This document shows positions 27,172 through 57,950 of a DNA stretch of 64,000 nucleotides, in pieces. Position 1 is the stretch's first letter, and each line of letters starts with the position of its first letter. A program made the position numbers and the translations under genes. Below the pieces are notes generated by a model. It ran no database searches, had not been told where the DNA came from, and saw nothing but the letters and a program-made list of their open reading frames with translations. The stretch covers positions 62,001 to 126,000 of IMG/VR virus record IMGVR_UViG_3300032307_000369; one strand, given 5' to 3'.

Positions 27172-27174
27172 AAT

Positions 27175-42154: not shown

Positions 42155-42997
42155 ATGAAAGATTATTATGGAATCCTTGGTGTCCCAAAAACTGCATCAG
42201 CAGACGACATCAAAAAAGCATATAGAAAAGCGGCTATGAAGCACCATCCAGACAGAGGTGGTGATCAAGCACGTTTTAAAGAAATTAACGAAGCACATGA
42301 TATATTATCCGACAAGGATAAACGTATGCAGTTGGATCAAGGTATTGATCCGCTAAATCCAAATCAAAGAACTTATAGAAGTCAAAATTTTAATCAAGGC
42401 TTCAATAATATGGAAGATATCTTTCAAAACTTTGGATTTGATTTTGGCTTTACTCCTCGAGGCTTTAGACCACAAGCCCCTACAAAGAATAAATCATTTA
42501 ATGTTCAAATGACGTTGACTCTAGAAGAAGCGTTTACGGGGATTAACAAAAACATTACAATTACTCATCCAGGCGGAGTTGGCAAAAACGTAGGAATTAA
42601 TATTCCACCTGGCATCGATAATGGCATGGCCATACGCTATGCTGGAATGGGCGATGACAGCATTAATGGTCTGCCTGCTGGTGATCTAACAATTATAATT
42701 AATATCGCTCCGCATCCAGTGTATGCTAGAGAAGGACTAAATTTATTAACTGATGTTACAGTTGACTGCTTTGATTCTATATTAGGAACAAATGCTGAAA
42801 TTGATACACTAGATGGTAGAAGGTTGCAGGTAGTAGTTCCTGCTGGAACACAGCCTGGAACTACCTTAGGATTAAAAAATGAAGGAATGCGAGACCAACA
42901 AGGTAATGTTGGAAAACTATATGTAAGAGTAAATGTTAGCGTTCCTAAAATTACTGATCCTATTAAATTGTCCTTAATCAAACAACTTAAAAATTAA
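42155..42997 (+). CDS. dnaJ: DnaJ/CbpA-like chaperone (no Zn finger)
   Basis: DYY.ILGV, HPD motif, G/F region, DnaJ C-domain. Confidence 0.92.
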   Translation: MKDYYGILGVPKTASADDIKKAYRKAAMKHHPDRGGDQARFKEINEAHDILSDKDKRMQLDQGIDPLNPNQRTYRSQNFNQGFNNMEDIFQNFGFDFGFTPRGFRPQAPTKNKSFNVQMTLTLEEAFTGINKNITITHPGGVGKNVGINIPPGIDNGMAIRYAGMGDDSINGLPAGDLTIIINIAPHPVYAREGLNLLTDVTVDCFDSILGTNAEIDTLDGRRLQVVVPAGTQPGTTLGLKNEGMRDQQGNVGKLYVRVNVSVPKITDPIKLSLIKQLKN

Positions 42998-43005
42998 ATA
43001 TCAAT

Positions 43006-43518
43006 ATGGAAAAACTTGTATTTCATCCAGATCCAATTTTAGAAGAACAAATGCCAGCATTTGATTTTGACAATCCTATTATGGATCCTAAAGAATTAGA
43101 AAAAGAACTATTAGCAATTATGTTTGCCAACAATGGCATTGGTCTTGCAAGTCCACAGATTGGCATAAGAACTAGAGTATTTGCAATGGGGCATTCACTT
43201 ATGCCAGAAGCAAGTCTTGCAATGTTTAACCCAACTGTAATTGATGCTAGCAATGAATTTCAAGATATAGAAGAAGGATGTTTGAGTTTTCCAAATATTT
43301 TTGCTAAAATTAAAAGACCTACTTGGATTGTAGTAAAATACAATACTAGTGATAATGAAGAACGAACAGAACGAATGGAGGGTTACAACTGTAAATGTTT
43401 TTTACATGAATTGGACCACTTAGATGGTATTGTAATGAAAGATCGTTTAAGTCAACTTAAATGGGCACTAGCCGTTAAAAAATCAAAAAAGGTAAAAAAT
43501 TATGTTAGAACCAAATGA
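43006..43518 (+). CDS. def: peptide deformylase
   Basis: GIGLASPQ, EGCLS, HELDH. Confidence 0.95.
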   Translation: MEKLVFHPDPILEEQMPAFDFDNPIMDPKELEKELLAIMFANNGIGLASPQIGIRTRVFAMGHSLMPEASLAMFNPTVIDASNEFQDIEEGCLSFPNIFAKIKRPTWIVVKYNTSDNEERTERMEGYNCKCFLHELDHLDGIVMKDRLSQLKWALAVKKSKKVKNYVRTK

Positions 43519-45784
43519 AGATCTAGAAAAGATCTTTGAACGTGCAATTCAATTATCTTTGGATAACCACCACCAATATATTACTTTAGAACATTTCTTA
43601 TATTGCATGGTTACTGACGAGTCATTTAACAGTGTACTTGTGGGTTATGGCACTGATGTTGAAGATTTAACTGCTAAGTTAGAAAACTATATTAAAAACG
43701 AGCTTGTTAGTATTGTTGATCAAACTTCAAATTCTAGACCAAAGAAAACTAATAGTGTTGAACGTATGCTTAATAGAGCATTTACGCACACACTGTTCTC
43801 TGGAAGAACAACCATTGAACCAATTGATTGCTTTTTAAGCATTTTAAATGAAAAGAAAAGTCATGCGGCATTTTATCTTCGCAGTGCTAATATTGAGAAG
43901 GACAAATTTATTGAGTATGTCAATAAAGAAATTGGCACAAGTAATCAAGACGGCGAAGAAGCCACAGTTCCAGAAAATAAACTTGAAGCATATATTGGCA
44001 ACTTCTGCACAAACCTAAATGCCAAGGTTAAAAATAAAGAGATTGATCCAGTTATTGGCAGGGACAAGGAACTGGAAGAAATGCAATTGGTACTTGCACG
44101 TAGACACAAGTCAAACGTAATGCTAATTGGTGATCCAGGTGTAGGTAAAACAGCTCTTGCTGAAGGTCTTGCACGTAAAATTGTTGAAGGTAACGTTCCT
44201 AAATTTATTCAAGATCACACAGTTTACACTTTAGACATTGGTGCTTTGTTAGCTGGTTCTAAATATCGTGGAGATTTTGAAGAGCGTCTTAAAAATGTTC
44301 TTACAGCTATCCAGAAAAAGAAAAAGTGCATTTTGTTTATTGACGAAGCACACATGATGAATGGTGCAGGAACAAGCAGTGGACAAAGTAATGACATGGC
44401 TAACATGTTAAAACCTGCACTTGCTAAAGGCGGACTAAAAGTTATCGCTAGCACTACATGGGAAGAATTCCGTAAGCACTTTGAAAAGGATCGTGCGCTA
44501 ATGCGTCGATTCCAACGTGTTATGGTTGGTGAGCCCGATGAAGTAACAACGATTAAGATTATCAAAGGTCTTAAAAAGTATTACGAAAAACATCATGGAT
44601 GCAAAATTACTAATCAAGCAATTATTGATTCTGTAAAATACAGTGTTAAGTACATGAGTGATAAAAAATTGCCTGATAAAGCAATTGATATTATTGACTG
44701 TGCTTGTGCTCGTTTCAAAGTACGTGATGAAGAAGGCGGCACAGTTGACCACGATGAAGTTGTATTCGAAGTCGCTAAAATGACTGGATTACCTTTAGAA
44801 CAAGTGGCTGCTAAGGATACAACAGTATTGCATGATTTAGAAGGCGATATTAAATCTGAAGTATATGGTCAGGACACTGCTGTAGATTCATTACTTGATA
44901 AAATTTATATTGCACAAGCAGGTCTTAAGAGCCATAATAAACCAATTGGTAGCTTCTTGTTTGTTGGTCCAACTGGATGTGGCAAGACTGAAACTGCTAA
45001 AGTATTGGCAAATAAGATGGGCATTAAGATGCTACGTTTTGACATGAGCGAGTTCCAAGAAAAACACTCAGTTGCTAAATTTATTGGTGCTCCTCCAGGC
45101 TACGTAGGTTTTGAAGACAATGCTGGACAATTGATTACACAGCTTCAAGAAAATCCTAACTGTATTCTATTGTTAGATGAAATTGAAAAAGCTCACCCAG
45201 ATGTTAGCAATGTTATGTTGCAACTTATGGACAACGGGTTTGTAACTGGCAGTAATGGCAAAAAAGCAGATGCACGTAATGTTATTATCATTATGACATC
45301 TAATTTAGGTGCTTCTGATAGTGAAAAATCTAATATAGGTTTTGGCAGTCAAGAAAAATTAGGAGAGATTAATAACGCTGTTAATAGATTCTTTGCTCCT
45401 GAATTCCGTAATCGTCTAGACGGTATTATTACATTTAAGAAACTTGAACACAGTGTAATGACAAAGGTAGTTGACAAGTTCATTAAAGAAATGAATTCGT
45501 TAATCACTGACAAGAATGTGTTTGTACAGCTAACTGAAACTGCTAAAAATCATCTTATTGACAAAGGGTTTGATAGCAAAATGGGTGCTAGACCAATGCA
45601 ACGTGTTATTGATGACGGTATTAAAAAGCCATTAAGCAGACAAATACTGTTTGGTAAGCTAGTAAATGGTGGCTTGGTCAAAGTTGACTTTGTTGATAAC
45701 CAACTAGTTTTTGATTATTTTGACCCTCTGCCAATTGTAAAAGATGTTGAAGCAAGTGCGGAAGAGAATGCAACACAAGATTAA
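43502..45784 (+). CDS. clpA: ClpA-type AAA+ unfoldase
   Basis: Clp N-domain, GDPGVGKT, KYRGDFE, GPTGCGKT, PPGYVG, IGF loop, no M-domain. Confidence 0.93.
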   Translation: MLEPNEDLEKIFERAIQLSLDNHHQYITLEHFLYCMVTDESFNSVLVGYGTDVEDLTAKLENYIKNELVSIVDQTSNSRPKKTNSVERMLNRAFTHTLFSGRTTIEPIDCFLSILNEKKSHAAFYLRSANIEKDKFIEYVNKEIGTSNQDGEEATVPENKLEAYIGNFCTNLNAKVKNKEIDPVIGRDKELEEMQLVLARRHKSNVMLIGDPGVGKTALAEGLARKIVEGNVPKFIQDHTVYTLDIGALLAGSKYRGDFEERLKNVLTAIQKKKKCILFIDEAHMMNGAGTSSGQSNDMANMLKPALAKGGLKVIASTTWEEFRKHFEKDRALMRRFQRVMVGEPDEVTTIKIIKGLKKYYEKHHGCKITNQAIIDSVKYSVKYMSDKKLPDKAIDIIDCACARFKVRDEEGGTVDHDEVVFEVAKMTGLPLEQVAAKDTTVLHDLEGDIKSEVYGQDTAVDSLLDKIYIAQAGLKSHNKPIGSFLFVGPTGCGKTETAKVLANKMGIKMLRFDMSEFQEKHSVAKFIGAPPGYVGFEDNAGQLITQLQENPNCILLLDEIEKAHPDVSNVMLQLMDNGFVTGSNGKKADARNVIIIMTSNLGASDSEKSNIGFGSQEKLGEINNAVNRFFAPEFRNRLDGIITFKKLEHSVMTKVVDKFIKEMNSLITDKNVFVQLTETAKNHLIDKGFDSKMGARPMQRVIDDGIKKPLSRQILFGKLVNGGLVKVDFVDNQLVFDYFDPLPIVKDVEASAEENATQD

Positions 45785-46989: not shown

Positions 46990-47358
46990 ATGAAATTATT
47001 TGAATTTTTTAGTCAGAATACAACTGAGCCAGCAGAGAAGGAAAATGACGACCAAATGCGTAAGGACGTCATGGCATTCATACTCGATGATAATGACATC
47101 TATCGAGAGCATCTTCTCCCGCTAATACACAAGCACAACAAAAACATTAAAGATGAAGACTTGCGTAAAGATTACGTAAAAGTTGTTAACGACTGCTGCC
47201 TTCAATTTTATAAAGAAAAAGAATTAAAAACAGATCCAAATGATCTTTTCCCAAAGGCAATGAGGAATGAGATGGTAAAACAACTTATCAAGATCAATAA
47301 AGAAAATATTATCACTAAAAAGAAGAAAAAAGATGAAGATACGAGATCTGTTATTTGA
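46990..47358 (+). CDS. hypothetical protein with N-terminal tag (MKLFEFF)
   Basis: TAAATA at 46930; first gene of the tagged cluster. Confidence 0.65.
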   Translation: MKLFEFFSQNTTEPAEKENDDQMRKDVMAFILDDNDIYREHLLPLIHKHNKNIKDEDLRKDYVKVVNDCCLQFYKEKELKTDPNDLFPKAMRNEMVKQLIKINKENIITKKKKKDEDTRSVI

Positions 47359-47719
47359 GGGCAGGATTGATCCTTCTCTTTTAAATCAATTCCTAAAACA
47401 TTGCTCTGAAGAATTAGGTCTTGAATCGTTACCTAAAATTAATCTTATAGATAATAAAGAGTATTCAATTACACATAAGTCATTTGGCGGGTACAGCCCA
47501 GATGAAAAATCAATAATACTTGCTACTGAAGGTAGACACCCAGTTGATGTGTTTAGAACGCTTGCACATGAACTAACACATTACAAACAAGACTTAGATG
47601 GACAACTTGAAGGCGACGATGTGGGTGCCACTGGTAGTCCACAAGAAAATGAAGCTAACTCTGTTGCTGGTATAATAATGCGAAATTTTGGTCAGAAGTT
47701 TCCAGAAGTATTTGAATAA
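47333..47719 (+). CDS. zincin-like metallopeptidase with N-terminal tag (MKIRDLLFE)
   Basis: RTLAHELTHYKQ...ENEAN. Confidence 0.7.
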   Translation: MKIRDLLFEGRIDPSLLNQFLKHCSEELGLESLPKINLIDNKEYSITHKSFGGYSPDEKSIILATEGRHPVDVFRTLAHELTHYKQDLDGQLEGDDVGATGSPQENEANSVAGIIMRNFGQKFPEVFE

Positions 47720-47727
47720 GGACCAAT

Positions 47728-48744
47728 ATGCGTATTAGAGATCTATTTGAAGGCGGGTGGGACACTACCAAAACACAAAATACTGTTTTACATCCTAAAA
47801 TTGTAAGTGTTGCTCTGTCTGTAGTAGATCAATTTGTTATTGACTTTAATAATTTTATTAAAAATAAAAACATTGGTCAAATTAAACGTGGCAGACCAAC
47901 AGGCAGTAGTGCATATCACGAACAAGATGCTATCGAAAAGCCTGAAACAATTTACGGCGACATAGACTTGCAAATGATTGCTCCACCAGTTGAAGGGTTA
48001 ACTTACGGGCAGTTTAGTGGTTATTGGAATAAGTTAGCAGATGATTTTGTTAAAACAGCTAATCCAACTTATGTAGACACAGCAGACAGCAAGCCAGGTC
48101 ATCCAATTTTTCAAGTTGGTAAACAAGACTATGTACAAGTTGATTTTATGTGGCATGAACAAAAAATGGCAGACTGGGGAGCAACTCGTGTAACTCCAGA
48201 ACGTGGTGTCAAAGGATTATTGTCAGGTAACATGTACAGTGTGTTTGGCGAAATACTTGATATGAGCATACAACATGCTGGCGTACAACTTAAAGTGATT
48301 GATGATCAGCGTGTACCATTTAGTAAACAAAAAGATACGCAGACTATTACAGTAACAACAAATCCAAAAACATTTATACTAGATGTTTTCATGTATTTGG
48401 CAAAACGTATGGGTGTAAACAATCCAAAGATTGATCCTATGCTTAAACAGTTTTCAGGTAATGACATTAATGATGTTAAAATAAGCAAACTAGTTAATGG
48501 TATGAAAGGATTTGCCTCAAGTGCCGAAGCAAGCGGTATGTTTGGTAACGGGGATTTACAAAATTTCAACTCTGCTCAAGATTTTATGAATAAGTTTTGG
48601 CAACGTTACGAAGAAAAAGCACAAATTGACATTGCTGGCAAAAAGCGTGACAAAGCACAGACCCCAGACGCTATTGCACGTGCCAATGCAGACAGAGAAA
48701 AGATCCAAAAAGGTCTAGATATGGTTAAGGGATATTTCCAATGA
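47728..48744 (+). CDS. Pol-beta-fold nucleotidyltransferase-like protein with tag (MRIRDLFE)
   Basis: TGS...GDIDL...VQVDF. Confidence 0.65.
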   Translation: MRIRDLFEGGWDTTKTQNTVLHPKIVSVALSVVDQFVIDFNNFIKNKNIGQIKRGRPTGSSAYHEQDAIEKPETIYGDIDLQMIAPPVEGLTYGQFSGYWNKLADDFVKTANPTYVDTADSKPGHPIFQVGKQDYVQVDFMWHEQKMADWGATRVTPERGVKGLLSGNMYSVFGEILDMSIQHAGVQLKVIDDQRVPFSKQKDTQTITVTTNPKTFILDVFMYLAKRMGVNNPKIDPMLKQFSGNDINDVKISKLVNGMKGFASSAEASGMFGNGDLQNFNSAQDFMNKFWQRYEEKAQIDIAGKKRDKAQTPDAIARANADREKIQKGLDMVKGYFQ

Positions 48745-49118
48745 GAGCAAAAGAATTTATTACTGAACTTAAAGCGCCAACAATAACCAACAGACAAGGT
48801 AAGTCAACCACTGCAATACATCTTTACACTGATGCTGAAAGACGCAATAGTGATTATGTGTCATATCGTTTAGGTATGGCTGTGGCGTGTACTGATGGAA
48901 CGAACGATCCAGACATGGATGGCAAAAGTTGGGTAGACAAGAGTAAAACAACACATCCATATACTTCTCAAGAACAAGAGATGTTAAAGAAAGCCTATAA
49001 GGTTGTAGGTGCAAAATATACAGATTTGACCAAAGGTGATATGAGAAGTCAAGAACTGAATACTACTAACGTTGTTAGTCCTGTTGCTAAACCCAAACGA
49101 AACAAATACGGCGTGTAA
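48741..49118 (+). CDS. hypothetical protein with tag (MRAKEFITE)
   Basis: ATGA coupling. Confidence 0.65.
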   Translation: MRAKEFITELKAPTITNRQGKSTTAIHLYTDAERRNSDYVSYRLGMAVACTDGTNDPDMDGKSWVDKSKTTHPYTSQEQEMLKKAYKVVGAKYTDLTKGDMRSQELNTTNVVSPVAKPKRNKYGV

Positions 49119-49130
49119 CGAGAGTTAAAA

Positions 49131-49970
49131 ATGAAAATATTTGAACTGTTAATTGAAAGTGGTAAACGACTTGCTAGTCAAGGAGTTGAAGTCTCTAGAG
49201 TAAACAAAGAAGACTTCAATGCCGCTAAAAATGTTTTAAATCCTATTCTAATCAAAGCAGGAATTAAAGCAGGATGGACTGCTGGCGGAGCTGGTAGTTT
49301 TGATCCAGAGCATGATTATGGTGGCGGTGGTAGAGAGGACAGTGGTGATATTGATATTATGATTGATCCAACTGACTTGGTAAAACAATTTCCTCCTAAT
49401 GTTGAAGCATATAACGCCGCAAGTAAAAAACCAATTGGTCCAAAAGCAATGGCATCAGCCATGGCGGATCCTGCTAAAAAAGCAAAAATTGAGATGAGTG
49501 CAAGTAAATGGGCACTTGCAACTTATATGTCAAAGAACGGATTTATAACTGACCCAGGAACGTTAACTGTTGAATACACTGCTGGTGGACAAAGTTTCTC
49601 AGTTGATTTAATTATACGTCCACGTAATGCATGGCCGTTGCACACACATGATTTTGTAACTGACCCAAAAATGCGTGGTGGCGATTTATGGACACAGATG
49701 TATCCAGTACTTGCTAAACTTGCAAGCCAAAAAACATTTGTTGATCCAAAAACAGGCGAAGAAAAAGGCAACCTACAATTCAGCCCAGACAGAGGATTGG
49801 TAGACAGAGATACTGATAAAGTCATTGCAATCAACAAAGATGACATTGCTAAAATATTGTTACACCCACAAGCAACAGCTAGAGATTTAGCAAGTATGAC
49901 AGGTATTAGAAATGCGTTGTCTAAACAGCCTGAAAAACTGTCAAAACTACCACAGCCACAAGAGCAATAA
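49131..49970 (+). CDS. Pol-beta-fold nucleotidyltransferase-like protein with tag (MKIFELLIE)
   Basis: AGS...SGDIDIMI...FSVDL. Confidence 0.65.
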   Translation: MKIFELLIESGKRLASQGVEVSRVNKEDFNAAKNVLNPILIKAGIKAGWTAGGAGSFDPEHDYGGGGREDSGDIDIMIDPTDLVKQFPPNVEAYNAASKKPIGPKAMASAMADPAKKAKIEMSASKWALATYMSKNGFITDPGTLTVEYTAGGQSFSVDLIIRPRNAWPLHTHDFVTDPKMRGGDLWTQMYPVLAKLASQKTFVDPKTGEEKGNLQFSPDRGLVDRDTDKVIAINKDDIAKILLHPQATARDLASMTGIRNALSKQPEKLSKLPQPQEQ

Positions 49971-49978
49971 ATACACTT

Positions 49979-52381
49979 ATGAATTTATTTGAACTGTTCT
50001 CACCCAATAAACAAATTATTATGGAAGGCATTGACCATCCAGAAGATCTCATTATCTCGCAAGGTAGTGCAGGTGCTGACAGGGTATTAAAAGATTTAGC
50101 AAGTTTAGAAAAAGATCCAAGTACAGTTACAGTTAAATGGGACGGCTTTCCAGCAGTAGTATTTGGTAGAGACAAAGGCGGAAACTTAGTGTTTATGGAT
50201 AAGCACATGTACGAAAAAGTATCTGCTGGCAAAATGGATTTTATGTCCATTAAAGATTATGATGAAAGTCGTGGAGCCAATCGTTCAAGTCTAATTGACC
50301 AAGAAAGTGTAATACGTCCGCTATTGAGCAAAATTGTTCCTAACGTTCGAGATCAATATTGGATGGGCGACTTAATGTGGACTGGCACCCCGCCAGTTAG
50401 TAATGGTGCATTTGTCTTTAAACCAAATACGGTTGAATATCAAGTTGACATAGATCAAAGTCCTGGAGTTGGCGATTCATTAAGCGACAAGATTGCTAGA
50501 AGCGGGGCAGGAATTGCAGTACATACTTTTATTCCAGGATTAGGACAACCTGATCAACCACTTGTTGGTCTTAAAGGATTACCAGAAGATGCTGGCATTA
50601 CTTTCCTAGTAGGAGAGATGAAGGACAAACCACGTGTTGCAATTAATTCAGAATTATTAAATCAAACGCAACAAATAATTAATGCAAATAGAAGTGCTGT
50701 GGATAAATTCTTTGTTGATCTAACTGCAATGAAAGGCAAGAGTGTTGTAACTGCCATGGGCCCTTTCATCACACGCATGTTAGAAGACAATGATATTAAA
50801 GGCAACATTGTTCCTAGATTCTTAGAATTTTTAGGAGAGCGTTTAACTGACAGTGCTAAACAAAAAATGTTAGGCACTAACAAAGATGGTTGGCTTTATC
50901 AAGAACAAGGCGGTGCTCCAGGACTACTTGGCATTTGGACCATGTGGGCCGCTATTACTGAATTAAAATTAAATATTAAACAACAAATTGATACGCAACA
51001 GCAAGGTAGTAAGATACGTGCTGTTACTGATGGAATTAACGCACATGAAGGTTATGTGTTTGGTGCTGGTAAAGACAAATTAAAACTAGTTGATAGATTA
51101 GGATTTAGCAGAGCAAACTTTGCTAAACATAAAGTTAGTGATGAAGAAGTGGCTGAAAAAAGTAAAATGCCGTTGGCAGTTTTTTGCTTTGGACGTATGA
51201 ATCCGCCAACAATGGGACACGGTCTTGTTTTAAATAAAACAATTGAACTTGGCAAACAAAATGCATTTATATTTTTAAGTAATAGTGTTGACCCTACAGA
51301 AAATCCTTTACAGCCATCAATAAAAGCAAAATTTGTTGAACAAATTTATCCTAATACCAAAGGACACATTGTTACAGAATTTGTCCAAAATCCAATATAC
51401 GCTGCCAACTGGTTATATGCTAAAGGCTATCGAAATATGGCATTTGTTGCTGGCAGTGATAGATTGGGTAAAGAAAAGGGCAGTATTGAAAAAATACTTA
51501 ACAGTTGGAATAGCGGTCCAGTTAGAAGTACCGATCCTGCTGGCGCTAGAGATTTCGTACAAATACAATACATAAGTGCAGGTGATAGGGATCCTGATAG
51601 TGAAGGAGTTTCAGGCTTCAGTGGATCTAAAGCACGTCAAGCAGTGACCGCAAATAACGAACAACAGTTTCAACAATATACTGGAATTGGTAATGATATC
51701 GTTGTTAATGGTAAAACACTATATCAGTCAGTTAGAGAAGGTATGGGTATAAAAGATCAAAAACCAACTGCTCCAGCCGTGCCTGCTAAACAACCTACTA
51801 TCAATGTACCAAATCAAAATGTCACTACTAAACAACCTGTTGAAAAGAAAGTTCCTGGACAAGCCCCAATGCAAAAAACAAATCAAGCAGACTTGGTTGA
51901 GAGTGTGCTAAGAGACAAAGAAGATTATTATGCCAAACGTAAGGCATTACAAGATATTCAATTGGATCCAAATACTGCTAAAGATGAAGAATTAAGAAAA
52001 GAACTTATTAGACGTAAACACGCTTTAGAACGTGAAGCCAAAAAGAAAGGTGTTATTGCTGAATCAATTATTAGATCAATTATTGATGAAGCACCAATCG
52101 AGATGGATCCACAAAATCCAAATGACCCAATGGTTATGCCACCTGGTCTTAATCCAGGAAAACTTAGCTATCGTAAACAACGTGCGGCTGCACAATTGGC
52201 AGATTTAGCTCGTATGGCTTCACAGGCAAATGAAAAGAATAGTGCTATAATGTGGGATAGCATTGTTAAACATTTTCCAGAGTTAGAAACAAACATTCGC
52301 AGTATACAACATGGCATGCAAGAATTAGAAAAAGTTAGACGTGCAGGCGGAAAACAAAGTAGAGGAATTGAAAAAATATGA
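49979..52381 (+). CDS. RNA-ligase-like domain + HIGH-type nucleotidyltransferase + small C-terminal modules, with tag (MNLFELF)
   Basis: KWDG, GDL, EGYV, KL(V)DR; FGRMNPPTMGH, AGSDR, SGSKAR. Confidence 0.7.
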   Translation: MNLFELFSPNKQIIMEGIDHPEDLIISQGSAGADRVLKDLASLEKDPSTVTVKWDGFPAVVFGRDKGGNLVFMDKHMYEKVSAGKMDFMSIKDYDESRGANRSSLIDQESVIRPLLSKIVPNVRDQYWMGDLMWTGTPPVSNGAFVFKPNTVEYQVDIDQSPGVGDSLSDKIARSGAGIAVHTFIPGLGQPDQPLVGLKGLPEDAGITFLVGEMKDKPRVAINSELLNQTQQIINANRSAVDKFFVDLTAMKGKSVVTAMGPFITRMLEDNDIKGNIVPRFLEFLGERLTDSAKQKMLGTNKDGWLYQEQGGAPGLLGIWTMWAAITELKLNIKQQIDTQQQGSKIRAVTDGINAHEGYVFGAGKDKLKLVDRLGFSRANFAKHKVSDEEVAEKSKMPLAVFCFGRMNPPTMGHGLVLNKTIELGKQNAFIFLSNSVDPTENPLQPSIKAKFVEQIYPNTKGHIVTEFVQNPIYAANWLYAKGYRNMAFVAGSDRLGKEKGSIEKILNSWNSGPVRSTDPAGARDFVQIQYISAGDRDPDSEGVSGFSGSKARQAVTANNEQQFQQYTGIGNDIVVNGKTLYQSVREGMGIKDQKPTAPAVPAKQPTINVPNQNVTTKQPVEKKVPGQAPMQKTNQADLVESVLRDKEDYYAKRKALQDIQLDPNTAKDEELRKELIRRKHALEREAKKKGVIAESIIRSIIDEAPIEMDPQNPNDPMVMPPGLNPGKLSYRKQRAAAQLADLARMASQANEKNSAIMWDSIVKHFPELETNIRSIQHGMQELEKVRRAGGKQSRGIEKI

Positions 52382-53205
52382 AAATTAAACAACTTTTAGA
52401 CGAAGCTAAAAAAGGTGTTAAAGCACCTAAGCATACAGTAAAGCCTAGAAACTTTGTTGCCAAAAATGCTATTGCTACTACTAGTGGAGCTGGCGCACAC
52501 AAAGATAAAAAGAAAGCTGAAAAGCAAGGCGATGTCAAACACAAGAAACAAGCTGTTCCCGTAGATGAACAGACTGTAGCAGAAGAGAAACAAAAAGGTG
52601 TTGATGGCAAAGCCTGCTGGAAAGGCTATAAGCGCATGGGCACTAAGAAGAAAGGTGGCAAGACTGTAGACAATTGTGTGCCAATGAATGAAAGTTTTGA
52701 TCCTGAATACGATGACGAAGCTGGAATGGCTGACAATAATCTTGAAACTCTAAAAAGAGCAGTAGAAGGCTTAGACGACATGATCAATGAAGGCGATAAC
52801 TTGCCTGAATGGTGTCAAGAAAAAATTGCAGTAGCAAAAAGCATGTTGATCTCAGTTTGGGACTACATGCAAAGTGAAGAAAACAGTATGTCTGAAAATC
52901 AAAGAAATCCTGATCTAATGAGTCAAAGTGATTATGACCGATATCAACAAGGTCAAATGGACCAACAAAAACGTGACTTTAAACGTGACGAAATGGAACA
53001 TGAACTTGGTCACGAAGAAAGAGGAATGTATTATGTTGTGATTGCTAAAAATGGCAAATGGGAACATACTAAAGCACAGCCAAGGCAAGAAGGTATGAAT
53101 GCCGCACAACGAATTATCAGTGCGTTACATGCAAAGTATCCAAGTATGCACTTGGGCATGGTAGGTCCTGATGGCAAAGTATATAATTATGGCAAGGGCA
53201 AATAA
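52378..53205 (+). CDS. modular/polyprotein-like protein with tag (MKIKQLLDE)
   Basis: unrelated short modules separated by hydrophobic-x-E sites. Confidence 0.65.
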   Translation: MKIKQLLDEAKKGVKAPKHTVKPRNFVAKNAIATTSGAGAHKDKKKAEKQGDVKHKKQAVPVDEQTVAEEKQKGVDGKACWKGYKRMGTKKKGGKTVDNCVPMNESFDPEYDDEAGMADNNLETLKRAVEGLDDMINEGDNLPEWCQEKIAVAKSMLISVWDYMQSEENSMSENQRNPDLMSQSDYDRYQQGQMDQQKRDFKRDEMEHELGHEERGMYYVVIAKNGKWEHTKAQPRQEGMNAAQRIISALHAKYPSMHLGMVGPDGKVYNYGKGK

Positions 53206-53206
53206 A

Positions 53207-53641
53207 ATGGATAAGTTACAGTTAGCATTAAAAACAGCATTTGCAAGTGAATACTCGTTTGCATTAAAAGCACAAAATTTTCACTGGAATGTGGAAGGCA
53301 TGTTCTTTACTCAATTTCATGATTTGTTTGGCGACATTTACAATGAAGTATATGGGAATATTGATGCGTTTGCAGAGAATATTAGAAAAGCAAAAGCATA
53401 TACCCCTGCAAGTTTAACACGTTTCAGTATGTTGAGTGTAATTCAAGATGAGACTGAAATGTTAGAGGCACCAGAAATGTGTGCAGAACTTTTATCTGAT
53501 TCTGATAAGATGGCAGAAATTCATAGATTAACTTTTCAATTATCTGAAGAAGCAGGTGAACATGGTCTTAGTGACTTTTTAGCAGGAAGACAAGATGCCT
53601 TCCGTAAACACTCTTGGATGTTAAGAGCCACATTGAAATGA
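53207..53641 (+). CDS. dps: Dps-family ferritin-like protein
   Basis: NFHWNVEG..F...H..F...Y, D..AE.IR, K..WML. Confidence 0.92.
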   Translation: MDKLQLALKTAFASEYSFALKAQNFHWNVEGMFFTQFHDLFGDIYNEVYGNIDAFAENIRKAKAYTPASLTRFSMLSVIQDETEMLEAPEMCAELLSDSDKMAEIHRLTFQLSEEAGEHGLSDFLAGRQDAFRKHSWMLRATLK

Positions 53642-54309
53642 AAATCAAAGAGCTATTAGAACAGAAACAAACTTCCAATGAGGATATTGGTAAAATAGCC
53701 AGTACCGTTGCGGATAAAGTGAGTGATGTTGCTAAGCCAGTTATAGATAAAGTAAGTGACTTTACTAAACCAGTTATAGATAAAGTAAGTGACTTTGCTA
53801 AACCAGTAGTGGACAAAGTAAAAGACGTTGCACGTCCTTATGTAGACAAACTTTCAACTAGTGTTAAAGACGTGCTGCCTAAAGATGTTGGAGATAAGGT
53901 TGTACATTATGCAGGTGATGGACATGACCATCCACCAAATATGCAATTTGCCAGCGACAAGTATAGAGAAAGAATGTCAAATTTAGATCCATCTTTTAAA
54001 GACGCACTCTATAGAGCGGCAAAAGATTCTGGTCTACCAATGCAGGTTACCAGTTCTCATAGATCTCAAGCAGAACAAGACGACTTATATAGACGATGGT
54101 TAAAAGGCGAACCTGGTATTTTTAAACCAAGTAAAAATGTTGGAAGCCATGGCGGGTTTGCTGTGGATATGAATGCAAAAGATGTTGCTAATTTACACGC
54201 ATGGTTAAAAAAGAACGACCCAGATGGTACCAAGTATGGACTACAAACTGGAATTGAATTTGGTGACCCTGTACATGTCCAATTACGAAATTTTAATAAA
54301 CGAGTATGA
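53638..54309 (+). CDS. M15-like Zn peptidase with tag (MKIKELLE) and 11-aa repeats
   Basis: TS..RS..EQ..LY, SH...AVD, DPVHVQ. Confidence 0.75.
   Translation: MKIKELLEQKQTSNEDIGKIASTVADKVSDVAKPVIDKVSDFTKPVIDKVSDFAKPVVDKVKDVARPYVDKLSTSVKDVLPKDVGDKVVHYAGDGHDHPPNMQFASDKYRERMSNLDPSFKDALYRAAKDSGLPMQVTSSHRSQAEQDDLYRRWLKGEPGIFKPSKNVGSHGGFAVDMNAKDVANLHAWLKKNDPDGTKYGLQTGIEFGDPVHVQLRNFNKRV
53713..53850 (+). repeat. 33-bp coding tandem repeat (about 4 copies)
   Basis: DKVSDVAKPVI / DKVSDFTKPVI / DKVSDFAKPVV / DKVKDVARPYV. Confidence 0.85.
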
Positions 54310-54599
54310 AACAGTATAAGATTACTACTGATAATATTGTCAATGACAGTCCAGACGATTGTTATATAGACCCTGCAGATCCTTTAAACGAAATAAAGGC
54401 TCTGCAATATCTTGGTGGTATCAATTCTCTAAATAGATTGCAAGAATATAAAGGCATGCAAGGTAGTAATATTAGCGCAACTGGTTCAGAAAAAGGAAGA
54501 TTACAAAGAGAACATAATATTAAACCTGGTACTCCTGAATGGTTTAAACTATGGTTTAGCTTACCTTATATGACTGGTGAGAGGCCTATTAAAAAATGA
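54306..54599 (+). CDS. hypothetical phage protein
   Basis: IKPGTPEWFKLWFS. Confidence 0.65.
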   Translation: MKQYKITTDNIVNDSPDDCYIDPADPLNEIKALQYLGGINSLNRLQEYKGMQGSNISATGSEKGRLQREHNIKPGTPEWFKLWFSLPYMTGERPIKK

Positions 54600-55729
54600 A
54601 AATAAGAGATTTATTAGAGTTATCAAAAACTAGTCCACTAGGCAGAGCACTTGACCAATTTAGTGGTTCAATTGACACTGAAAAAATTGGCAATCAAATA
54701 TCCAATGTGTTCAAACCAGACACAGTTGCTGATACTAATCGTTCAACCAATATCACTTCTGCTCCTGGTACGTCATCATCTAGTAAACCTGTTGCATCTG
54801 CGCCTAAGACAGACAACGTATTATCTGATGTAGAAAGTGAACTTGATAGACAAGGAATCACAGATCCATTTGTTAGAAAATCTATTCTAGCTAAAACTGG
54901 GCAAGAGTCAGGATCTAAATATAGAGTTACTGAAATTCCTTTCAAAAATACAAGTAATGATACTATTAGATTGCGATTACCACAACTACAAGGTATGAGT
55001 GATGAAGAACTCAATGCCTTAAAACAAGACAAAGTGGCGTTTTTTAACAGGGCATATGGATATAAAGGCAACACGTTAAACAATAACGAACCAGGTGATG
55101 GTTGGAAATATCGAGGTCGTGGTCTAACTGGTATCACTGGAAAAGTAAATTATCAAAGAGTTGACGATGCACTAGGGCTTAAGGGCGAGTTGGTTAAAAA
55201 TCCAGATCTATTGCTAGATCCTGAAATTGATAAAAAAGCATCTGTTTGGTACTACAAGGCAGCTGGTGCAAACAATGTAAAATTTGACAATCAAGAAGAT
55301 GCAAATAAATGGGCCATACACAAGGCTGGCGGGAACATGTATGCTCCTGGTACTAAATTAGGAAATATAGCACTAGATGACATGAACAAAAGGACTGCTG
55401 TAATTGCTACTACGGGAGCCGCAGTTTTAGCTGGTCCTACTTTATTAAATAAAGCAAAAGATATAATTGGAAACTTAAAAGGTACTGCTGGCAATGTAGT
55501 TAACACTGCAAAAAATGTTGGTGTAAGAACTGCTGCCACTGCCGCACTAGCAGGTAGTTTAGGTGGAGGTGGTGGGAGTGGTGGAGGATACTATACCAGT
55601 AGAACTTCTGAAGAACCAGAAATTGTCGTTATAATTAACGGCAAACGTAAAAAATTTAAAACTAAAGCAGAAGCATTGCAGGCAATTAAGTTAGCTAAAC
55701 AACAAGGATTGGAAGTGTCAAATGGGTAA
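54596..55729 (+). CDS. second GH19-like glycosidase with tag (MKIRDLLE)
   Basis: QESG, GDGWKYRGRG...ITGK.NY, NPDLL. Confidence 0.75.
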   Translation: MKIRDLLELSKTSPLGRALDQFSGSIDTEKIGNQISNVFKPDTVADTNRSTNITSAPGTSSSSKPVASAPKTDNVLSDVESELDRQGITDPFVRKSILAKTGQESGSKYRVTEIPFKNTSNDTIRLRLPQLQGMSDEELNALKQDKVAFFNRAYGYKGNTLNNNEPGDGWKYRGRGLTGITGKVNYQRVDDALGLKGELVKNPDLLLDPEIDKKASVWYYKAAGANNVKFDNQEDANKWAIHKAGGNMYAPGTKLGNIALDDMNKRTAVIATTGAAVLAGPTLLNKAKDIIGNLKGTAGNVVNTAKNVGVRTAATAALAGSLGGGGGSGGGYYTSRTSEEPEIVVIINGKRKKFKTKAEALQAIKLAKQQGLEVSNG

Positions 55730-56330
55730 GCCAGAAGTTTATTTAGATATGGACGGAGTTATTGCAGACTTTTTTACAGAGTATGCTAAACTTGCGGGTA
55801 TTGAATCAGGAAACTATAGAGATATTCCCCCGGCTAAAACAGATCCTACATTAAACAAAATGATAGGTACTAACTTTTTTGCACGATTACCAAAATGCAG
55901 AAATGCAGATGCACTAGTAGACTTAATAGTAAAAACGTTTGGTAGTTTTAATATCTGTTCAAGTCCTTTGCGTGGTGATCATGATAACAGTGAAAAACAG
56001 AAAAAGATTTGGCTTAACAATAATCTAAAATATCAACCTAAAGATGTTGTAATTACGCCAAACAAAGCCAAATGGGCCAAGCAAAAAGATGGTACTCCAA
56101 ACATCCTAATTGATGACCGAGGGAGTAATATTAGTTCTTGGGAAGCCGCTGGAGGTATTGGTATCAAATATCAAGCAGACGAAGATAGCCTACAGGTGAT
56201 AGTGCAAGGAATTAAAAGAGCGTTTTCTGTCATAAAAGGCGAACAAGAGCATAATCCGCAACAATTAAAAAGTTTAGATCGTAGCAGTGGTAACTTAATT
56301 GCTACCAGTGGTGATAAAGACTCCCATTAA
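55722..56330 (+). CDS. HAD-family 5'(3')-nucleotidase
   Basis: YLDMDGVIADF, CSSP, K..W, LIDD. Confidence 0.85.
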   Translation: MGKPEVYLDMDGVIADFFTEYAKLAGIESGNYRDIPPAKTDPTLNKMIGTNFFARLPKCRNADALVDLIVKTFGSFNICSSPLRGDHDNSEKQKKIWLNNNLKYQPKDVVITPNKAKWAKQKDGTPNILIDDRGSNISSWEAAGGIGIKYQADEDSLQVIVQGIKRAFSVIKGEQEHNPQQLKSLDRSSGNLIATSGDKDSH

Positions 56331-56339
56331 GGACATATT

Positions 56340-56576
56340 ATGAAAATTCAAGAAATTATTACAGAAACTGCTACAGCTGGTTCAACAAGTGCTAGTAATA
56401 TTGCTAGTACTGGGAATAGTCCTCATGTTGCTGTTGGAAGTCCAGCAGTAATCAAACGTTGGGGTGGAAGTCCAGGAAAAATGGGCAAGAGCCCTAGTCC
56501 AACTAAAACAGAGCCACAGGATGCTGAAGATAACCCAGTGACCAATCCTAAAGTTGGCAACAACTTAATTTCTTAA
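56340..56576 (+). CDS. small low-complexity protein with tag (MKIQEIITE)
   Basis: AAGGA SD; E-TATAGSTSASNIA. Confidence 0.65.
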   Translation: MKIQEIITETATAGSTSASNIASTGNSPHVAVGSPAVIKRWGGSPGKMGKSPSPTKTEPQDAEDNPVTNPKVGNNLIS

Positions 56577-57901: not shown

Positions 57902-57913
57902 TCCACTAAAACT

Positions 57914-57936
57914 AACAGGGCACAAGTTGCCCTGTT
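57914..57936 (+). terminator. hairpin / probable terminator
   Basis: aacagggca-caagt-tgccctgtt. Confidence 0.7.
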
Positions 57937-57950
57937 CTTACGACTAACAC

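What the first reader, a model, noticed from the sequence alone, without database searches (positions are those of the whole stretch)
47728..52381. Tagged nucleotidyl-transfer module: two Pol-beta NTases next to an RNA-ligase-like/HIGH fusion
Seen: two divergent proteins with GS...GDID...hDh triads (GDID at about 47956 and 49344). They are followed by an 800-aa protein with ligase-type motifs KWDG (50135), EGYV (about 51047) and KL(V)DR, fused to a HIGH-like domain FGRMNPPTMGH (51188). A HAD nucleotidase lies at 55722. Established: these motifs mark the Pol-beta superfamily (CCA-adding enzymes, CD-NTases), covalent Lys-AMP ligases and NMNAT/cytidylyltransferases. Inference: an injected heal-and-seal kit for tRNA/RNA cut by host anticodon nucleases, or enzymes that rebuild NAD+ or corrupt nucleotide immune signals. 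Sequence alone cannot identify the substrate.
Basis: partly seen in the sequence, partly recalled or inferred. Interest (0 to 1): 0.78.

Follow-up and report, generated by a model that had tools for sequence, protein, structure and literature searches.

The report
Capsid-tagged polymerase-like and ligase-like phage cargo
An uncultured T4-like phage puts the same short capsid-targeting tag that T4 uses on ten neighbouring genes, among them two polymerase-beta-type enzymes and an RNA-ligase-like/adenylyltransferase fusion, so it probably injects ready-made nucleic-acid end-repair enzymes along with its DNA.

Summary
All ORFs and motifs sit at the stated coordinates, and the catalytic residues are invariant in homologues.

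- **P1 and P3:** P1 (47728-48744) and P3 (49131-49970) are distant paralogues. Their fold is Pol-beta type and is closest to the palm plus thumb of family X DNA polymerases.
- **The 800-aa protein:** it combines DUF6267 with a HIGH-type nucleotidyltransferase and a tail. DUF6267 is shown here to have the polynucleotide-ligase fold, with RNA ligases as the best matches and KxDG, EG and KxK invariant.
- **The tag:** it is an 8-16-residue N-terminal propeptide ending in (L/I)-x-E, like T4's capsid targeting sequence. It marks 10 of 14 consecutive genes (46990-56576).
- **Published virion data:** proteomes of two cyanophages contain the tagged orthologue of the HIGH-domain enzyme.

Best reading: this is a variable cassette of head-packaged, injected proteins whose cargo includes a kit for extending 3' ends and sealing nicks. 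Whether it acts on DNA or RNA is unresolved. A complete tRNA heal-and-seal set is not encoded here, because no kinase is present.

This is a new variant of a known kind (T4 internal proteins). The three enzyme families were previously unannotated.

The parts
46990..47358 (+). First tagged gene of the cassette (122 aa, MKLFEFFSQNTTEPAE...). Function unknown.
   Evidence: Tag pattern. No Pfam hit. Weak homologue in L009.
47333..47719 (+). Tagged 128-aa protein (MKIRDLLFE|G) with an HExxH metalloprotease-like motif.
   Evidence: phrog_87 metallo-protease 3.9e-4. DUF6782 and Peptidase_M91 hits are weak.
47728..48744 (+). P1, a tagged (MRIRDLFE|GGW) Pol-beta-superfamily nucleotidyltransferase resembling the palm plus thumb of family X polymerases. 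GS at 47902, DxD at 47959-47967, third Asp at 48142.
   Evidence: AF2 model pLDDT 94. VIA wide search: Pol beta Z 10.1, TdT 9.8, Tth PolX 9.6, ASFV PolX 9.5. All top 50 Foldseek PDB hits are Pol X. Triad invariant.
48741..49118 (+). Tagged 125-aa protein (MRAKEFITE|L). Function unknown.
   Evidence: Conserved at 52% identity elsewhere in the L009 cassette.
49131..49970 (+). P3, a tagged (MKIFELLIE|SGKRL) Pol-beta-type nucleotidyltransferase and distant paralogue of P1. It has an extra invariant H171-x-H173-D174.
   Evidence: hhalign of P3 against P1: probability 88%, E 2.8e-6, triads aligned. Its ESM Atlas model resembles Pol-beta palm/thumb proteins, TM 0.5. Invariant residues.
49979..50026 (+). 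16-residue N-terminal propeptide/tag of the fusion protein (MNLFELFSPNKQIIME|G).
   Evidence: Disordered in the model (pLDDT below 50 for residues 1-16). Homologues that lack it start at the HPED core.
50027..51154 (+). DUF6267 domain. It has the polynucleotide-ligase (covalent nucleotidyltransferase) fold with a ~130-aa helical insertion and no OB domain. Predicted adenylated Lys53 is at 50135.
   Evidence: Pfam DUF6267 1.4e-29. Model pLDDT 86.5. The top 25 of 48,161 PDB representatives are all ligases, RNA ligases first (NgrRnl Z 8.1, Trl1 7.3, T4 Rnl2 7.2, REL1 7.1, T4 Rnl1 6.8). Invariant motifs.
51155..51838 (+). HIGH-superfamily (cytidylyl/adenylyl-transferase-like) domain. TxGH lies at 51209-51220 and the S..SKAR motif at 51611-51637.
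   Evidence: phrog_3041 3.3e-39. PF01467 scores 16.1 bits, below the cut-off of 21. Invariant residues in 70 homologues.
51839..52381 (+). C-terminal 180-aa tail of the fusion, of unknown role. Residues 644-702 recur in another cassette protein of a related phage.
   Evidence: blastp hit to L004:3218-5191, 52% identity, 1.5e-11.
52378..53205 (+). Tagged (MKIKQLLDE|A) 275-aa protein with a DUF7230-like Cys-rich segment. It is a partial homologue of the cyanophage virion protein S-SZBM1_139.
   Evidence: Virion detection of _139 reported in PMC9146016.
53207..53641 (+). Untagged Dps/ferritin-like protein. Its likely true start is Met13 of the ORF that opens at 53171.
   Evidence: PF00210 3.4e-16. 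Start inferred from the L009 orthologue.
53638..54309 (+). Tagged (MKIKELLE|Q) VanY/M15-like peptidoglycan peptidase.
   Evidence: phrog_2649 endolysin 2e-8. VanY hit is weak.
54596..55729 (+). Tagged (MKIRDLLE|L) GH19-like muramidase/chitinase-fold protein.
   Evidence: phrog_181 endolysin 1.7e-27. PF00182 9.3e-5.
55722..56330 (+). HAD-family 5'(3')-deoxyribonucleotidase-like phosphatase. Untagged here, but its orthologue in a related phage carries a tag.
   Evidence: phrog_2643 1.3e-21. L004:8734-9273 is 61% identical and starts MRANELTGATE.
56340..56576 (+). Last tagged gene (MKIQEIITE|T, 78 aa). Function unknown.

Best explanation
The three genes belong to a 9.6-kb variable cassette (46990-56576). 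It lies between a clpA-like gene and the family-B DNA polymerase of an uncultured large T4-like phage. The cassette encodes capsid-internal, injected proteins.

Proposed steps, all inferred for this phage:
1. Each cargo protein is made with an 8-16-residue N-terminal capsid targeting sequence (consensus M-K/R-x-x-E/D-L/F-L/I-x-E).
2. The tag docks the protein on the prohead scaffold core.
3. The T4-type prohead protease removes the tag after (L/I)-x-E.
4. The mature enzyme stays in the head with the DNA and enters the cell with it, before any phage gene is expressed.

The cargo includes enzymes that work on polynucleotide ends. P1 and P3 are minimal Pol-X-like nucleotidyltransferases that would add nucleotides to a 3'-OH. 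The DUF6267 domain is a ligase that would form Lys53-AMP and seal a 3'-OH/5'-phosphate break. It is fused to a HIGH-type nucleotidyltransferase of unknown substrate.

I think the most likely job is immediate fill-and-seal repair of breaks in a nucleic-acid duplex. The target could be the incoming phage DNA, possibly through ribonucleotide patches, or RNA.

Shown: the folds, the conserved catalytic residues, the tag and its clustering, the recurrent adjacency and fusion of these enzyme types, and virion presence of tagged orthologues of the HIGH enzyme in two cyanophages (from published data).

Inferred: packaging in this phage, injection, and the substrate.
For: Tag:
- It matches T4 IPII/IPIII MKTYQEFIAE|A and IPI MKTFKEFTSTTTPVSTITE|A.
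- It marks 10 of 14 consecutive genes against 1 of 60 elsewhere.
- In P1 and P3 homologues the tag is 8-9 residues long, ends in L/I-x-E directly before the invariant core, and is simply missing in other homologues.
- A related 334-kb contig has the same cassette position with different tagged cargo.
- T4 internal proteins share only the capsid targeting sequence (PMC3012670, PMC9026906).

Virion evidence: S-SZBM1_140 (MRFRQFIIE|A) and S-CREM2 gp154 (MKNFSSFLTE|A) are orthologues of the HIGH domain and were detected by LC-MS in purified virions.

Folds.

Coupling of the enzyme types:
- P3, P1 and the fusion are syntenic at 65% identity in L009.
- Natural fusions exist: DUF6267 with a P1-like domain (990 aa, TM 0.88), HIGH with a P1-like domain (P0389), and HIGH with NTP_transf_2, with or without a kinase or PAP2.
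- Giant viruses fuse Pol X to ligases.
- No kinase is present in the cassette, so 3'-OH/5'-P breaks are the simplest substrate.
- The phage also encodes the UV-nicking enzyme UvdE.
Against: - No virion data exist for this phage.
- The prohead protease gene is not in the window.
- P1, P3 and DUF6267 match known families only by fold, not by sequence profile. The ligase Z-scores are modest (at most 8.1).
- The untagged DUF6267 orthologue of S-SZBM1 was not reported in its virion proteome.
- Fusions of these domains with unrelated cargo (Sod_Cu, GH19, GGACT, ParB/Srx) show that fusion may reflect co-delivery and not a shared pathway.
- P1 and P3 are near-neutral in charge, unlike basic Pol X enzymes.
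- The role of the HIGH domain in repair is unexplained.
- The ligase fold leans to RNA ligases while the NTase fold leans to DNA polymerases, so the substrate is not settled.
Confidence: 0.5

Rival explanations
1. This is specifically an injected tRNA/RNA heal-and-seal kit against host anticodon nucleases. The NTases restore lost 3' nucleotides (RlaP-like or CCA-like), the HAD phosphatase heals 3' ends, and the ligase reseals the tRNA. Injection solves the problem that a translation block would stop the phage from making its own repair enzymes.
For: - The ligase fold is nearest to RNA ligases and lacks an OB domain.
- Pol-beta NTases next to RNA ligases are a known repair pairing: RlaP adds 1-2 NMP to damaged RNA (bioRxiv 10.64898/2025.12.29.696909; PMC7824862).
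- Viral HIGH-domain relatives are fused to an AAA_33/Zeta kinase and to PAP2 phosphatase.
- HTVC008M has a Zeta/AAA_33 kinase between its DUF6267 and HIGH genes.
- A HAD phosphatase sits in the cassette and is tagged in a relative.
Against: [quoted passage not shown]
- P1 and P3 do not match the RlaP or CCA-enzyme profiles.
- Their best structural matches are DNA polymerases of family X.
- No tRNA genes are in the window.
Confidence: 0.25
2. The enzymes act on small molecules. They would rebuild NAD+ or another dinucleotide cofactor (HIGH domain as an NMNAT/PPAT/FMNAT-like enzyme), or make or destroy nucleotide immune signals (NTases as cyclase-like enzymes), to blunt NADase or CBASS-type defences.
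For: - The HIGH domain has intact TxGH and S..R motifs and a faint NMNAT-family hit (TIGR00482, E 0.04).
- HIGH plus a P-loop kinase recalls NadR-type salvage (the NadR comparison is my own knowledge).
- cGAS and CdnC appear among the weak fold hits for P1.
- Packaged NAD/ADPr enzymes are known in myoviruses (PMC9503650).
Against: - The cGAS and CD-NTase matches cover only the core, with lower Z (at most 7.4) than Pol X.
- A ligase fold with invariant KxDG, EG and KxK points to polynucleotide ends.
- No Nampt, Nudix or ADPR-processing partner is in the cassette.
- The NMNAT hit is far below its cut-off (13.9 against 112 bits).
Confidence: 0.12
3. The NTases are injected host-takeover effectors. 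Like T4 Alt, but by AMPylation or nucleotidylylation, they would modify host proteins or tRNA 3' ends to shut the host down. The ligase/HIGH fusion would have a separate role.
For: - T4's injected enzyme Alt modifies host RNA polymerase (PMC9503650).
- P1-like domains occur inside large polyvalent-type proteins, such as a 1096-aa ParB/Srx protein.
- Several different tagged NTases sit side by side in a related phage.
Against: The palm plus thumb resemblance to template-using polymerases, together with recurrent fusion or adjacency to a ligase fold, fits nucleic-acid joining better. No similarity to known AMPylators was found.
Confidence: 0.08
4. The N-terminal motif is not a capsid targeting sequence. 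It could be a degradation signal for the phage's own ClpA/ClpP, or a translation-start feature, and the enzymes would act only in the cytoplasm.
For: - The cassette lies directly downstream of a clpA-like gene, and the phage encodes ClpP.
- There are no virion data for this phage.
- M-basic-hydrophobic N-termini can be Clp recognition signals (my own knowledge).
Against: - The motif matches T4's capsid targeting sequence in sequence, length and its L/I-x-E end.
- Tagged orthologues are in virions of cyanophages. Cyanophages do not appear among the ten commonest organism groups of phage records that hold a ClpA homologue.
- The tagged cell-wall hydrolases fit ejection proteins.
Confidence: 0.1

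Closest known systems
T4 internal proteins IPI, IPII, IPIII and Alt with their capsid targeting sequence (CTS)
   Same: There is a short N-terminal propeptide (T4 MKTYQEFIAE|A; here for example MRAKEFITE|L and MKIFELLIE|S) ending in L/I-x-E, the prohead-protease site. Otherwise unrelated proteins share only the tag, sit in a variable locus, and are delivered with the DNA.
   Different: The cargo here consists of large enzymes (polymerase-like, ligase-like, HIGH NTase, cell-wall hydrolases), not small basic proteins or an ADP-ribosyltransferase. Ten tagged genes lie in one block. Packaging is not shown for this phage.
Phage RNA repair sets: T4 Pnkp + Rnl1/Rnl2, and RNA ligase + RlaP (PF10127) Pol-beta NTase
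   Same: A Pol-beta-type NTase sits next to, or is fused with, an RNA-ligase-fold enzyme. A HAD phosphatase is nearby.
   Different: P1 and P3 do not match the RlaP profile. DUF6267 does not match the Rnl profiles. No kinase is present. The known sets are expressed after infection and are not packaged.
Pol X + DNA ligase short-patch repair pairs (Pol beta/Lig III, ASFV Pol X + ASFV ligase, Pol X-ligase fusions of giant viruses)
   Same: P1 aligns over both palm and thumb with Pol beta, TdT and the minimal 174-aa ASFV Pol X (Z 9.5-10.1). It is paired with a ligase-fold enzyme. That ASFV also carries its repair enzymes in the virion is my own recollection and was not checked here.
   Different: There is no 8-kDa or fingers domain. 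No Pfam Pol X domains are detected. The ligase lacks an OB domain and resembles RNA ligases more than DNA ligases.
Cyanomyovirus 'cytidylyltransferase' (phrog_3041/395) with the neighbouring DUF6267 gene
   Same: These are orthologous domains in the same order: DUF6267, then the HIGH enzyme, then a DUF7230-type protein. The HIGH enzyme carries a CTS-like tag and is virion-associated in S-SZBM1 and S-CREM2.
   Different: In the window the two are fused into one tagged 800-aa protein, so the ligase-like domain would be packaged too. In cyanophages DUF6267 is separate and untagged.
Polyvalent virion-packaged effector proteins (Iyer et al. 2017, PMC5512222)
   Same: Diverse enzymatic domains are delivered early with the DNA. 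The same domains are found fused in many combinations.
   Different: Here most cargo is encoded as separate genes, each with its own tag. It is not one giant polypeptide anchored by MuF or portal domains.

Membership tests
Pol-beta nucleotidyltransferase superfamily (fold level) | hG[GS] motif, then DxD on the next strand, then a third acidic residue on a later strand | tested here: met
   P1: G59, S60, D78, D80, D139. P3: G55, S56, D73, D75, D159. All are invariant. The two triads align with each other in hhalign.
Pol-beta nucleotidyltransferase superfamily (fold level) | alpha-beta-alpha-beta-alpha-beta core fold | tested here: met
   P1 model pLDDT 94. Core residues 20-153 align with GLD-2, TUTases, OAS and CD-NTases at Z 6.4-9.
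Family X DNA polymerases | Palm plus thumb arrangement | tested here: met
   162-196 residues (model 3-262) align with Pol beta 139-335, TdT, Tth PolX, ASFV PolX, Pol lambda and Pol mu at Z 8.8-10.1.
Family X DNA polymerases | Sequence-profile match to DNA_pol_B_palm/thumb, and presence of the fingers and 8-kDa HhH domains | tested here: not met
   No Pfam hit at E up to 0.1. No PDB sequence-profile hit. Only about 20 residues precede the palm in the model.
RlaP (PF10127) RNA-ligase-associated NTases | Match to the PF10127 profile | tested here: not met
   No Pfam hit for P1 or P3.
RlaP (PF10127) RNA-ligase-associated NTases | Gene neighbourhood with an RNA ligase | tested here: met
   P1 and P3 are adjacent to the DUF6267 ligase-fold gene in the window and in L009. 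They are fused to it in a 990-aa cluster.
CCA-adding enzymes / CD-NTases | Family profile match, or best structural match | tested here: not met
   No Pfam or NCBIfam hit. CD-NTases score Z 7.4 or less over the core only, and the CCA enzyme appears only at rank 30 with E 0.84.
Covalent nucleotidyltransferases (polynucleotide ligases / capping enzymes) | Motif I KxDG with the catalytic Lys | tested here: met
   K53, W54, D55 and G56 are invariant in 31 sequences. The motif lies between two strands in the model.
Covalent nucleotidyltransferases (polynucleotide ligases / capping enzymes) | Motifs III, IIIa, IV (EG) and V (KxK) | tested here: inconclusive
   The candidates are conserved: G130-D131-L132 is invariant, as are E357-G-Y-V360 and K369, while F147 and K367 are conserved in at least 90% of sequences. 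Their equivalence to the ligase motifs could not be checked residue by residue, because no model coordinates were available.
Covalent nucleotidyltransferases (polynucleotide ligases / capping enzymes) | Nucleotidyltransferase-domain fold | tested here: met
   The top 25 of 48,161 PDB representatives are all ligases, at Z 5.3-8.1 with 146-207 residues aligned. The same holds among Foldseek candidates.
Covalent nucleotidyltransferases (polynucleotide ligases / capping enzymes) | OB domain with motif VI (DNA ligases, capping enzymes) | tested here: not met
   Stand-alone DUF6267 proteins end about 15 residues after the KxK strand. The model shows only helices there.
Covalent nucleotidyltransferases (polynucleotide ligases / capping enzymes) | Self-nucleotidylylation of the Lys, and strand joining | not testable with these tools
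   This needs a biochemical assay.
Pfam DUF6267 (PF19782) | Profile match above the gathering score | tested here: met
   104.1 bits against a cut-off of 27, over the full profile length.
HIGH-superfamily nucleotidyltransferases (PF01467 CTP_transf_like) | (H/T)xGH motif and the C-terminal S-x-x-x-x-R type motif | tested here: met
   T411-x-G413-H414 and S548...R553 are invariant in 70 sequences.
HIGH-superfamily nucleotidyltransferases (PF01467 CTP_transf_like) | Profile match above the gathering score | tested here: inconclusive
   The window protein scores 16.1 bits against a cut-off of 21. However, phrog_3041 gives 3.3e-39, and the orthologues S-CREM2 gp154 (22.3 bits) and P0389 (25.5 bits) pass.
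T4-type capsid-targeted internal proteins | N-terminal 8-19-residue propeptide resembling the T4 CTS and ending in L/I-x-E | tested here: met
T4-type capsid-targeted internal proteins | Unrelated proteins share only the tag; the locus is variable between related phages | tested here: met
   Ten tagged genes have unrelated folds. Cargo differs in L004 and L009 at the same genome position.
T4-type capsid-targeted internal proteins | Protein present in the virion with the tag removed | not testable with these tools
   The only data are for orthologues of the HIGH enzyme in two cyanophages (PMC9146016, PMC10665884). N-terminal processing was not reported there.
T4-type capsid-targeted internal proteins | T4-type prohead protease (gp21) in the same genome | tested here: inconclusive
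   No head genes are in the window, L004 or L009. The rest of the genome is not available, so presence is inferred from the T4-like gene content only.

The most novel reading that the evidence does not exclude
A widespread group of uncultured large T4-like phages loads its capsids with a complete, pre-made polynucleotide repair kit: Pol-X-like end-extending enzymes plus a new RNA-ligase-fold enzyme fused to a HIGH adenylyltransferase. The kit is injected with the genome, so breaks in the incoming DNA, or in tRNAs cut by host nucleases, are mended before the first phage gene is expressed. This would be the first virion-delivered nucleic-acid repair system in a bacteriophage, and it would assign a function to DUF6267 and to the conserved cyanophage 'cytidylyltransferase'.
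Probability: 0.3. Interest if true: 0.8.

Novelty: new variant of a known kind. Interest (0 to 1): 0.62.

Why it matters
T4's capsid targeting sequence has been known since 1996, but mainly as a tag on small anti-restriction proteins and on Alt. This window shows the same tag used as a general address label on a whole block of enzymes.

Three virus-only families gain a fold assignment here:
- P1 and P3 had no annotation at all and are Pol-X-like.
- DUF6267 is ligase-like.

The analysis also links the long-unexplained 'cytidylyltransferase' of marine cyanomyoviruses, which is found in virions, to these enzymes.

If the cargo really repairs nucleic acid on entry, it would be a new layer of phage counter-defence or damage tolerance in sunlit waters. 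The tag itself gives a simple rule for predicting injected proteins in metagenomic T4-like genomes.

Tried and rejected
- **Sequence profiles of P1, P3 and DUF6267 against PDB sequences:** nothing significant.
- **Pfam, PHROG and NCBIfam for P1 and P3:** nothing.
- **tblastn of P1 and P3 against 50,697 phage records:** no match.
- **BLASTP of P1 against P3:** nothing. Only the profile-profile comparison linked them.
- **hhalign of DUF6267 against P1 or P3:** unrelated. The earlier Atlas resemblance between P3 and 'DUF6267 proteins' is explained by natural fusions that contain a P1/P3-like domain. It does not mean DUF6267 has a Pol-beta fold.
- **Cyanophage genes upstream of DUF6267 (T4-GC 419 type):** not P1/P3 relatives.
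- **T4 late-promoter motif TATAAATA:** depleted, 1 found against 7.3 expected.
- **Sigma-70-like promoter scan:** sites at chance level inside the cassette (45 found against 44.5 expected); terminator-like sites 15 against 8.9 ± 3.1 expected, not clearly enriched.
- **tRNA genes:** none in the window.
- **Head genes:** none in the window or in the related loci.
- **Literature:** nothing on DUF6267 or 'cytitidyltransferase'.
- **Domain fusions as proof of a shared pathway:** rejected as sufficient evidence, because the same domains are also fused to unrelated cargo.
- **Residue-level superposition of Lys53 on a ligase catalytic Lys:** could not be done, because model coordinates are not exposed.

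Full report
**What is in the sequence.** The whole window is coded on the + strand, with about 37% G+C. The three ORFs of the finding are real: P1 at 47728-48744 (338 aa), P3 at 49131-49970 (279 aa), and an 800-aa protein at 49979-52381.

The window comes from an uncultured T4-like myovirus. Its 800-aa protein matches adjacent gene pairs in cyanomyoviruses and in Pelagibacter phage HTVC008M. Homologues lie on metagenomic contigs of up to 300-380 kb. The cassette lies between a clpA-like gene and the family-B DNA polymerase.

**P1 and P3.** Neither protein has a Pfam, PHROG or NCBIfam match. Neither has a homologue in 50,697 phage records. Both have many metagenomic relatives: 736 clusters for P1 and 126 for P3, and P1 has 206 clusters at the 50% identity level.

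The GS, DxD and third Asp are invariant in both families. BLASTP does not link P1 and P3. Profile-profile comparison does, at probability 88% and E 2.8e-6, with the triads in register.

The AlphaFold model of P1 is confident, with pLDDT 94 and pTM 0.90. Three searches bear on its fold:
- Foldseek against the PDB returns only family X polymerases in the top 50.
- An independent search of 48,161 representative chains puts these first: Pol beta palm plus thumb (Z 10.1), TdT (9.8), Thermus PolX (9.6), the 174-aa ASFV Pol X (9.5), and Pol lambda and Pol mu (about 9). These align over 160-196 residues. Terminal uridylyl- and adenylyl-transferases, OAS and CD-NTases match only the ~100-residue core, at Z 6.4-9.
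- The ESM Atlas model of P3 also resembles Pol-beta palm/thumb proteins.

P1 and P3 are therefore Pol-beta-superfamily enzymes with a Pol-X-like palm and thumb. They have no fingers or 8-kDa domain and no sequence-level membership in any named family.

**The 800-aa protein.** Residues 18-385 match DUF6267 over its full length at 1.4e-29. Residues 393-617 match the phage 'cytidyltransferase' families at 3.3e-39.

The DUF6267 model has pLDDT 86.5. Foldseek finds nothing significant, but ligases head its list. On re-alignment the top 15 are all covalent nucleotidyltransferases. In the Foldseek-independent search the top 25 of 48,161 chains are all polynucleotide ligases, with RNA ligases first: Naegleria Rnl 8.1, Trl1 7.3, T4 Rnl2 7.2, REL1 7.1 and T4 Rnl1 6.8. 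DNA ligases score 6.4 or less.

The Z-scores are modest. However, the list contains only one superfamily, and the invariant residues are the ones expected for it: K53-W-D-G (motif I), GDL130-132, E357-G-Y-V and K369, plus K367 in at least 90% of sequences. There is a ~130-residue helical insertion and no OB domain.

The second domain keeps an invariant FGRxNPPTxGH and an S...R motif in 70 homologues. It is a HIGH-superfamily nucleotidyltransferase, and nothing identifies its substrate.

**The tag.** Ten genes between 46990 and 56576 begin with M-K/R-x-x-E/D-L/F-L/I-x-E. A simple pattern finds 11 of 74 genes, 10 of them among 14 consecutive genes, against 1 in 404 internal methionines. Fisher p is 1.4e-8.

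T4's internal proteins start MKTYQEFIAE|A (IPII, IPIII) and MKTFKEFTSTTTPVSTITE|A (IPI). These 10-19-residue propeptides are the capsid targeting sequences. They load otherwise unrelated proteins into the prohead and are cut off by the gp21 protease after glutamate (PMC9026906, PMC3012670, PMC5694885).

In the P1 and P3 families the tag is 8-9 residues long. The three residues before the invariant core are L/I-x-E (LFE, ILE, LRE, IVE and others). Many homologues lack the tag and start exactly at the core. In both models the tag is the only disordered part.

A related 334-kb contig has a cassette at the same genome position with different tagged cargo. That cargo includes a stand-alone HIGH enzyme, the HAD phosphatase and three consecutive NTases. 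A 65%-identical relative keeps P3, P1 and the fusion side by side in another order, and there P3 has no tag.

**Experimental support from the literature.** In cyanophage S-SZBM1, LC-MS of CsCl-purified virions detected the 'cytidylyltransferase' S-SZBM1_140 and its neighbour _139 (PMC9146016). In S-CREM2 the cytidylyltransferase ORF154 is likewise virion-associated (PMC10665884).

I checked these proteins against the window:
- Both cytidylyltransferases are orthologues of the HIGH domain, and both start with a CTS-like tag: MRFRQFIIE|A and MKNFSSFLTE|A.
- S-SZBM1_141 is the DUF6267 orthologue (1e-34). It is untagged and was not reported in the virion.
- S-SZBM1_139 shares a segment with the window gene at 52378.

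**Are the three genes one module?** Partly. They are members of a larger cargo cassette that also holds the following:
- a metalloprotease-like protein;
- two cell-wall hydrolases, both tagged;
- a Dps-like protein;
- a HAD 5'(3')-nucleotidase;
- several proteins of unknown function.

Yet the three enzyme types recur together. DUF6267 is fused to the HIGH domain in many phages and to a P1-like domain in a 990-aa cluster (TM 0.88). The HIGH domain is fused to a P1-like domain in P0389, and to NTP_transf_2 with or without an AAA_33/Zeta kinase or PAP2 phosphatase. HTVC008M has a Zeta/AAA_33 kinase between its DUF6267 and HIGH genes. S-CREM2 has an NTP_transf_2 gene two genes after its HIGH enzyme.

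The same domains are also fused to unrelated cargo, including Cu/Zn superoxide dismutase, GH19, GGACT, an amidoligase and ParB/Srx. This is the 'polyvalent protein' logic of co-delivered effectors (PMC5512222, PMC9503650). Fusion alone therefore does not prove a shared pathway.

**Mechanism.** The best-supported reading is that these are head-packaged, injected enzymes acting on polynucleotide ends. P1 and P3 would extend a 3'-OH, and the DUF6267 domain would seal through a Lys53-AMP intermediate.

Two known pairings fit:
- RNA ligase plus a Pol-beta NTase (RlaP) in RNA repair.
- Pol X plus ligase in short-patch DNA repair, which is also found fused in giant viruses.

The ligase fold leans to RNA ligases, and the NTase fold leans to DNA polymerases. 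The cassette has no P-loop kinase. A complete heal-and-seal of tRNA ends with 5'-OH and 2',3'-cyclic phosphate is therefore not encoded here. Breaks with 3'-OH and 5'-phosphate in a duplex are the simplest substrate. The phage also carries UvdE, and no tRNA genes are in the window. I cannot decide between DNA and RNA. The NAD+/signal idea and the host-modification idea remain possible but have less support.

**Rival for the tag.** A degradation signal for the phage's own ClpA/ClpP is conceivable, because the cassette follows clpA and ClpP is encoded. Against this, tagged orthologues are in virions of cyanophages, and cyanophages do not appear among the ten commonest organism groups of phage records that hold ClpA homologues. 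In addition, the tag's length and its L/I-x-E end match the T4 system.

**Verdict.** This is a new variant of a known kind, T4-type capsid-targeted internal proteins, carrying three previously unannotated enzyme families.

Noticed in passing
window 11431-14817: A run of Fe-S cluster assembly genes in a phage: a SufC-like ABC ATPase, a SufBD core protein, a class-V aminotransferase (cysteine desulfurase type), a NifU_N scaffold and an Fe-S_biosyn (IscA/SufA-like) protein.
   Followed up: partly
window 9934-10950: A UV damage endonuclease UvdE homologue (PF03851, 4.3e-35). It is untagged. It shows that this phage invests in repair of UV-damaged DNA.
   Followed up: partly
window 6635-7255, 42155-45784: The phage encodes ClpP (8e-65), DnaJ, peptide deformylase and a 760-aa ClpA-like AAA+ protein. 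ClpA homologues are otherwise seen mainly in jumbo phages such as PA5oct.
   Followed up: partly
window 6219-6638: A second, small HIGH-type cytidylyltransferase (PF01467, 1.6e-13). It is untagged and unrelated in context to the fusion protein.
   Followed up: no
window 15183-31416: Three giant ORFs (2844, 1138 and 1413 aa). The first two share an N-terminal motif 'N(I)G...NDGTGD..R.AF.KVN.N', which also opens a 264-aa protein in L009 (2916-3710). They are probably tail fibre proteins.
   Followed up: no
window 56600-57978: A very basic, untagged 433-aa low-complexity protein (net charge +34) closes the cassette. It is followed by a perfect hairpin at 57914-57936 and the best sigma-70-like promoter of the region at 57951-57978, with 11 of 12 matches.
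   Followed up: no
window, whole: The T4 late-promoter core TATAAATA occurs once against 7.3 expected. There are no tRNA genes.
   Followed up: no
L004:11017-11727 and L012:7013-7726 (S-CREM2 gp156): A third NTase type, classical NTP_transf_2-like (GS...DFD...ELYVED). It is tagged in the 334-kb relative and lies two genes after the virion cytidylyltransferase in cyanophage S-CREM2.
   Followed up: partly
proteins P0364, P0371, P0379, P0389; Atlas and BFVD clusters: P1-like and DUF6267 domains occur fused to GH19, GGACT, Amidoligase_2, a HIGH NTase, Cu/Zn superoxide dismutase and a 1096-aa ParB/Srx protein. This suggests that cargo domains are freely concatenated.
   Followed up: partly
L010:8001-8843 (P0227 group): A 30%-identical, tag-less branch of the P3 family sits in a different, smaller phage type (58-kb contig). 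It lies among small unknown genes upstream of a pectate-lyase-type tail spike.
   Followed up: no
window 53171-53641: The Dps/ferritin-like ORF probably starts at Met13 (53207), judging from the L009 orthologue, so it overlaps the upstream gene less than the mechanical ORF suggests.
   Followed up: partly
L007:6490-7137 (S-SZBM1 prohead protease): The cyanophage prohead protease itself begins MKLITETIEDAKVIITE|G. This is a CTS-like N-terminus, as noted for T4 gp21 in PMC9026906.
   Followed up: no
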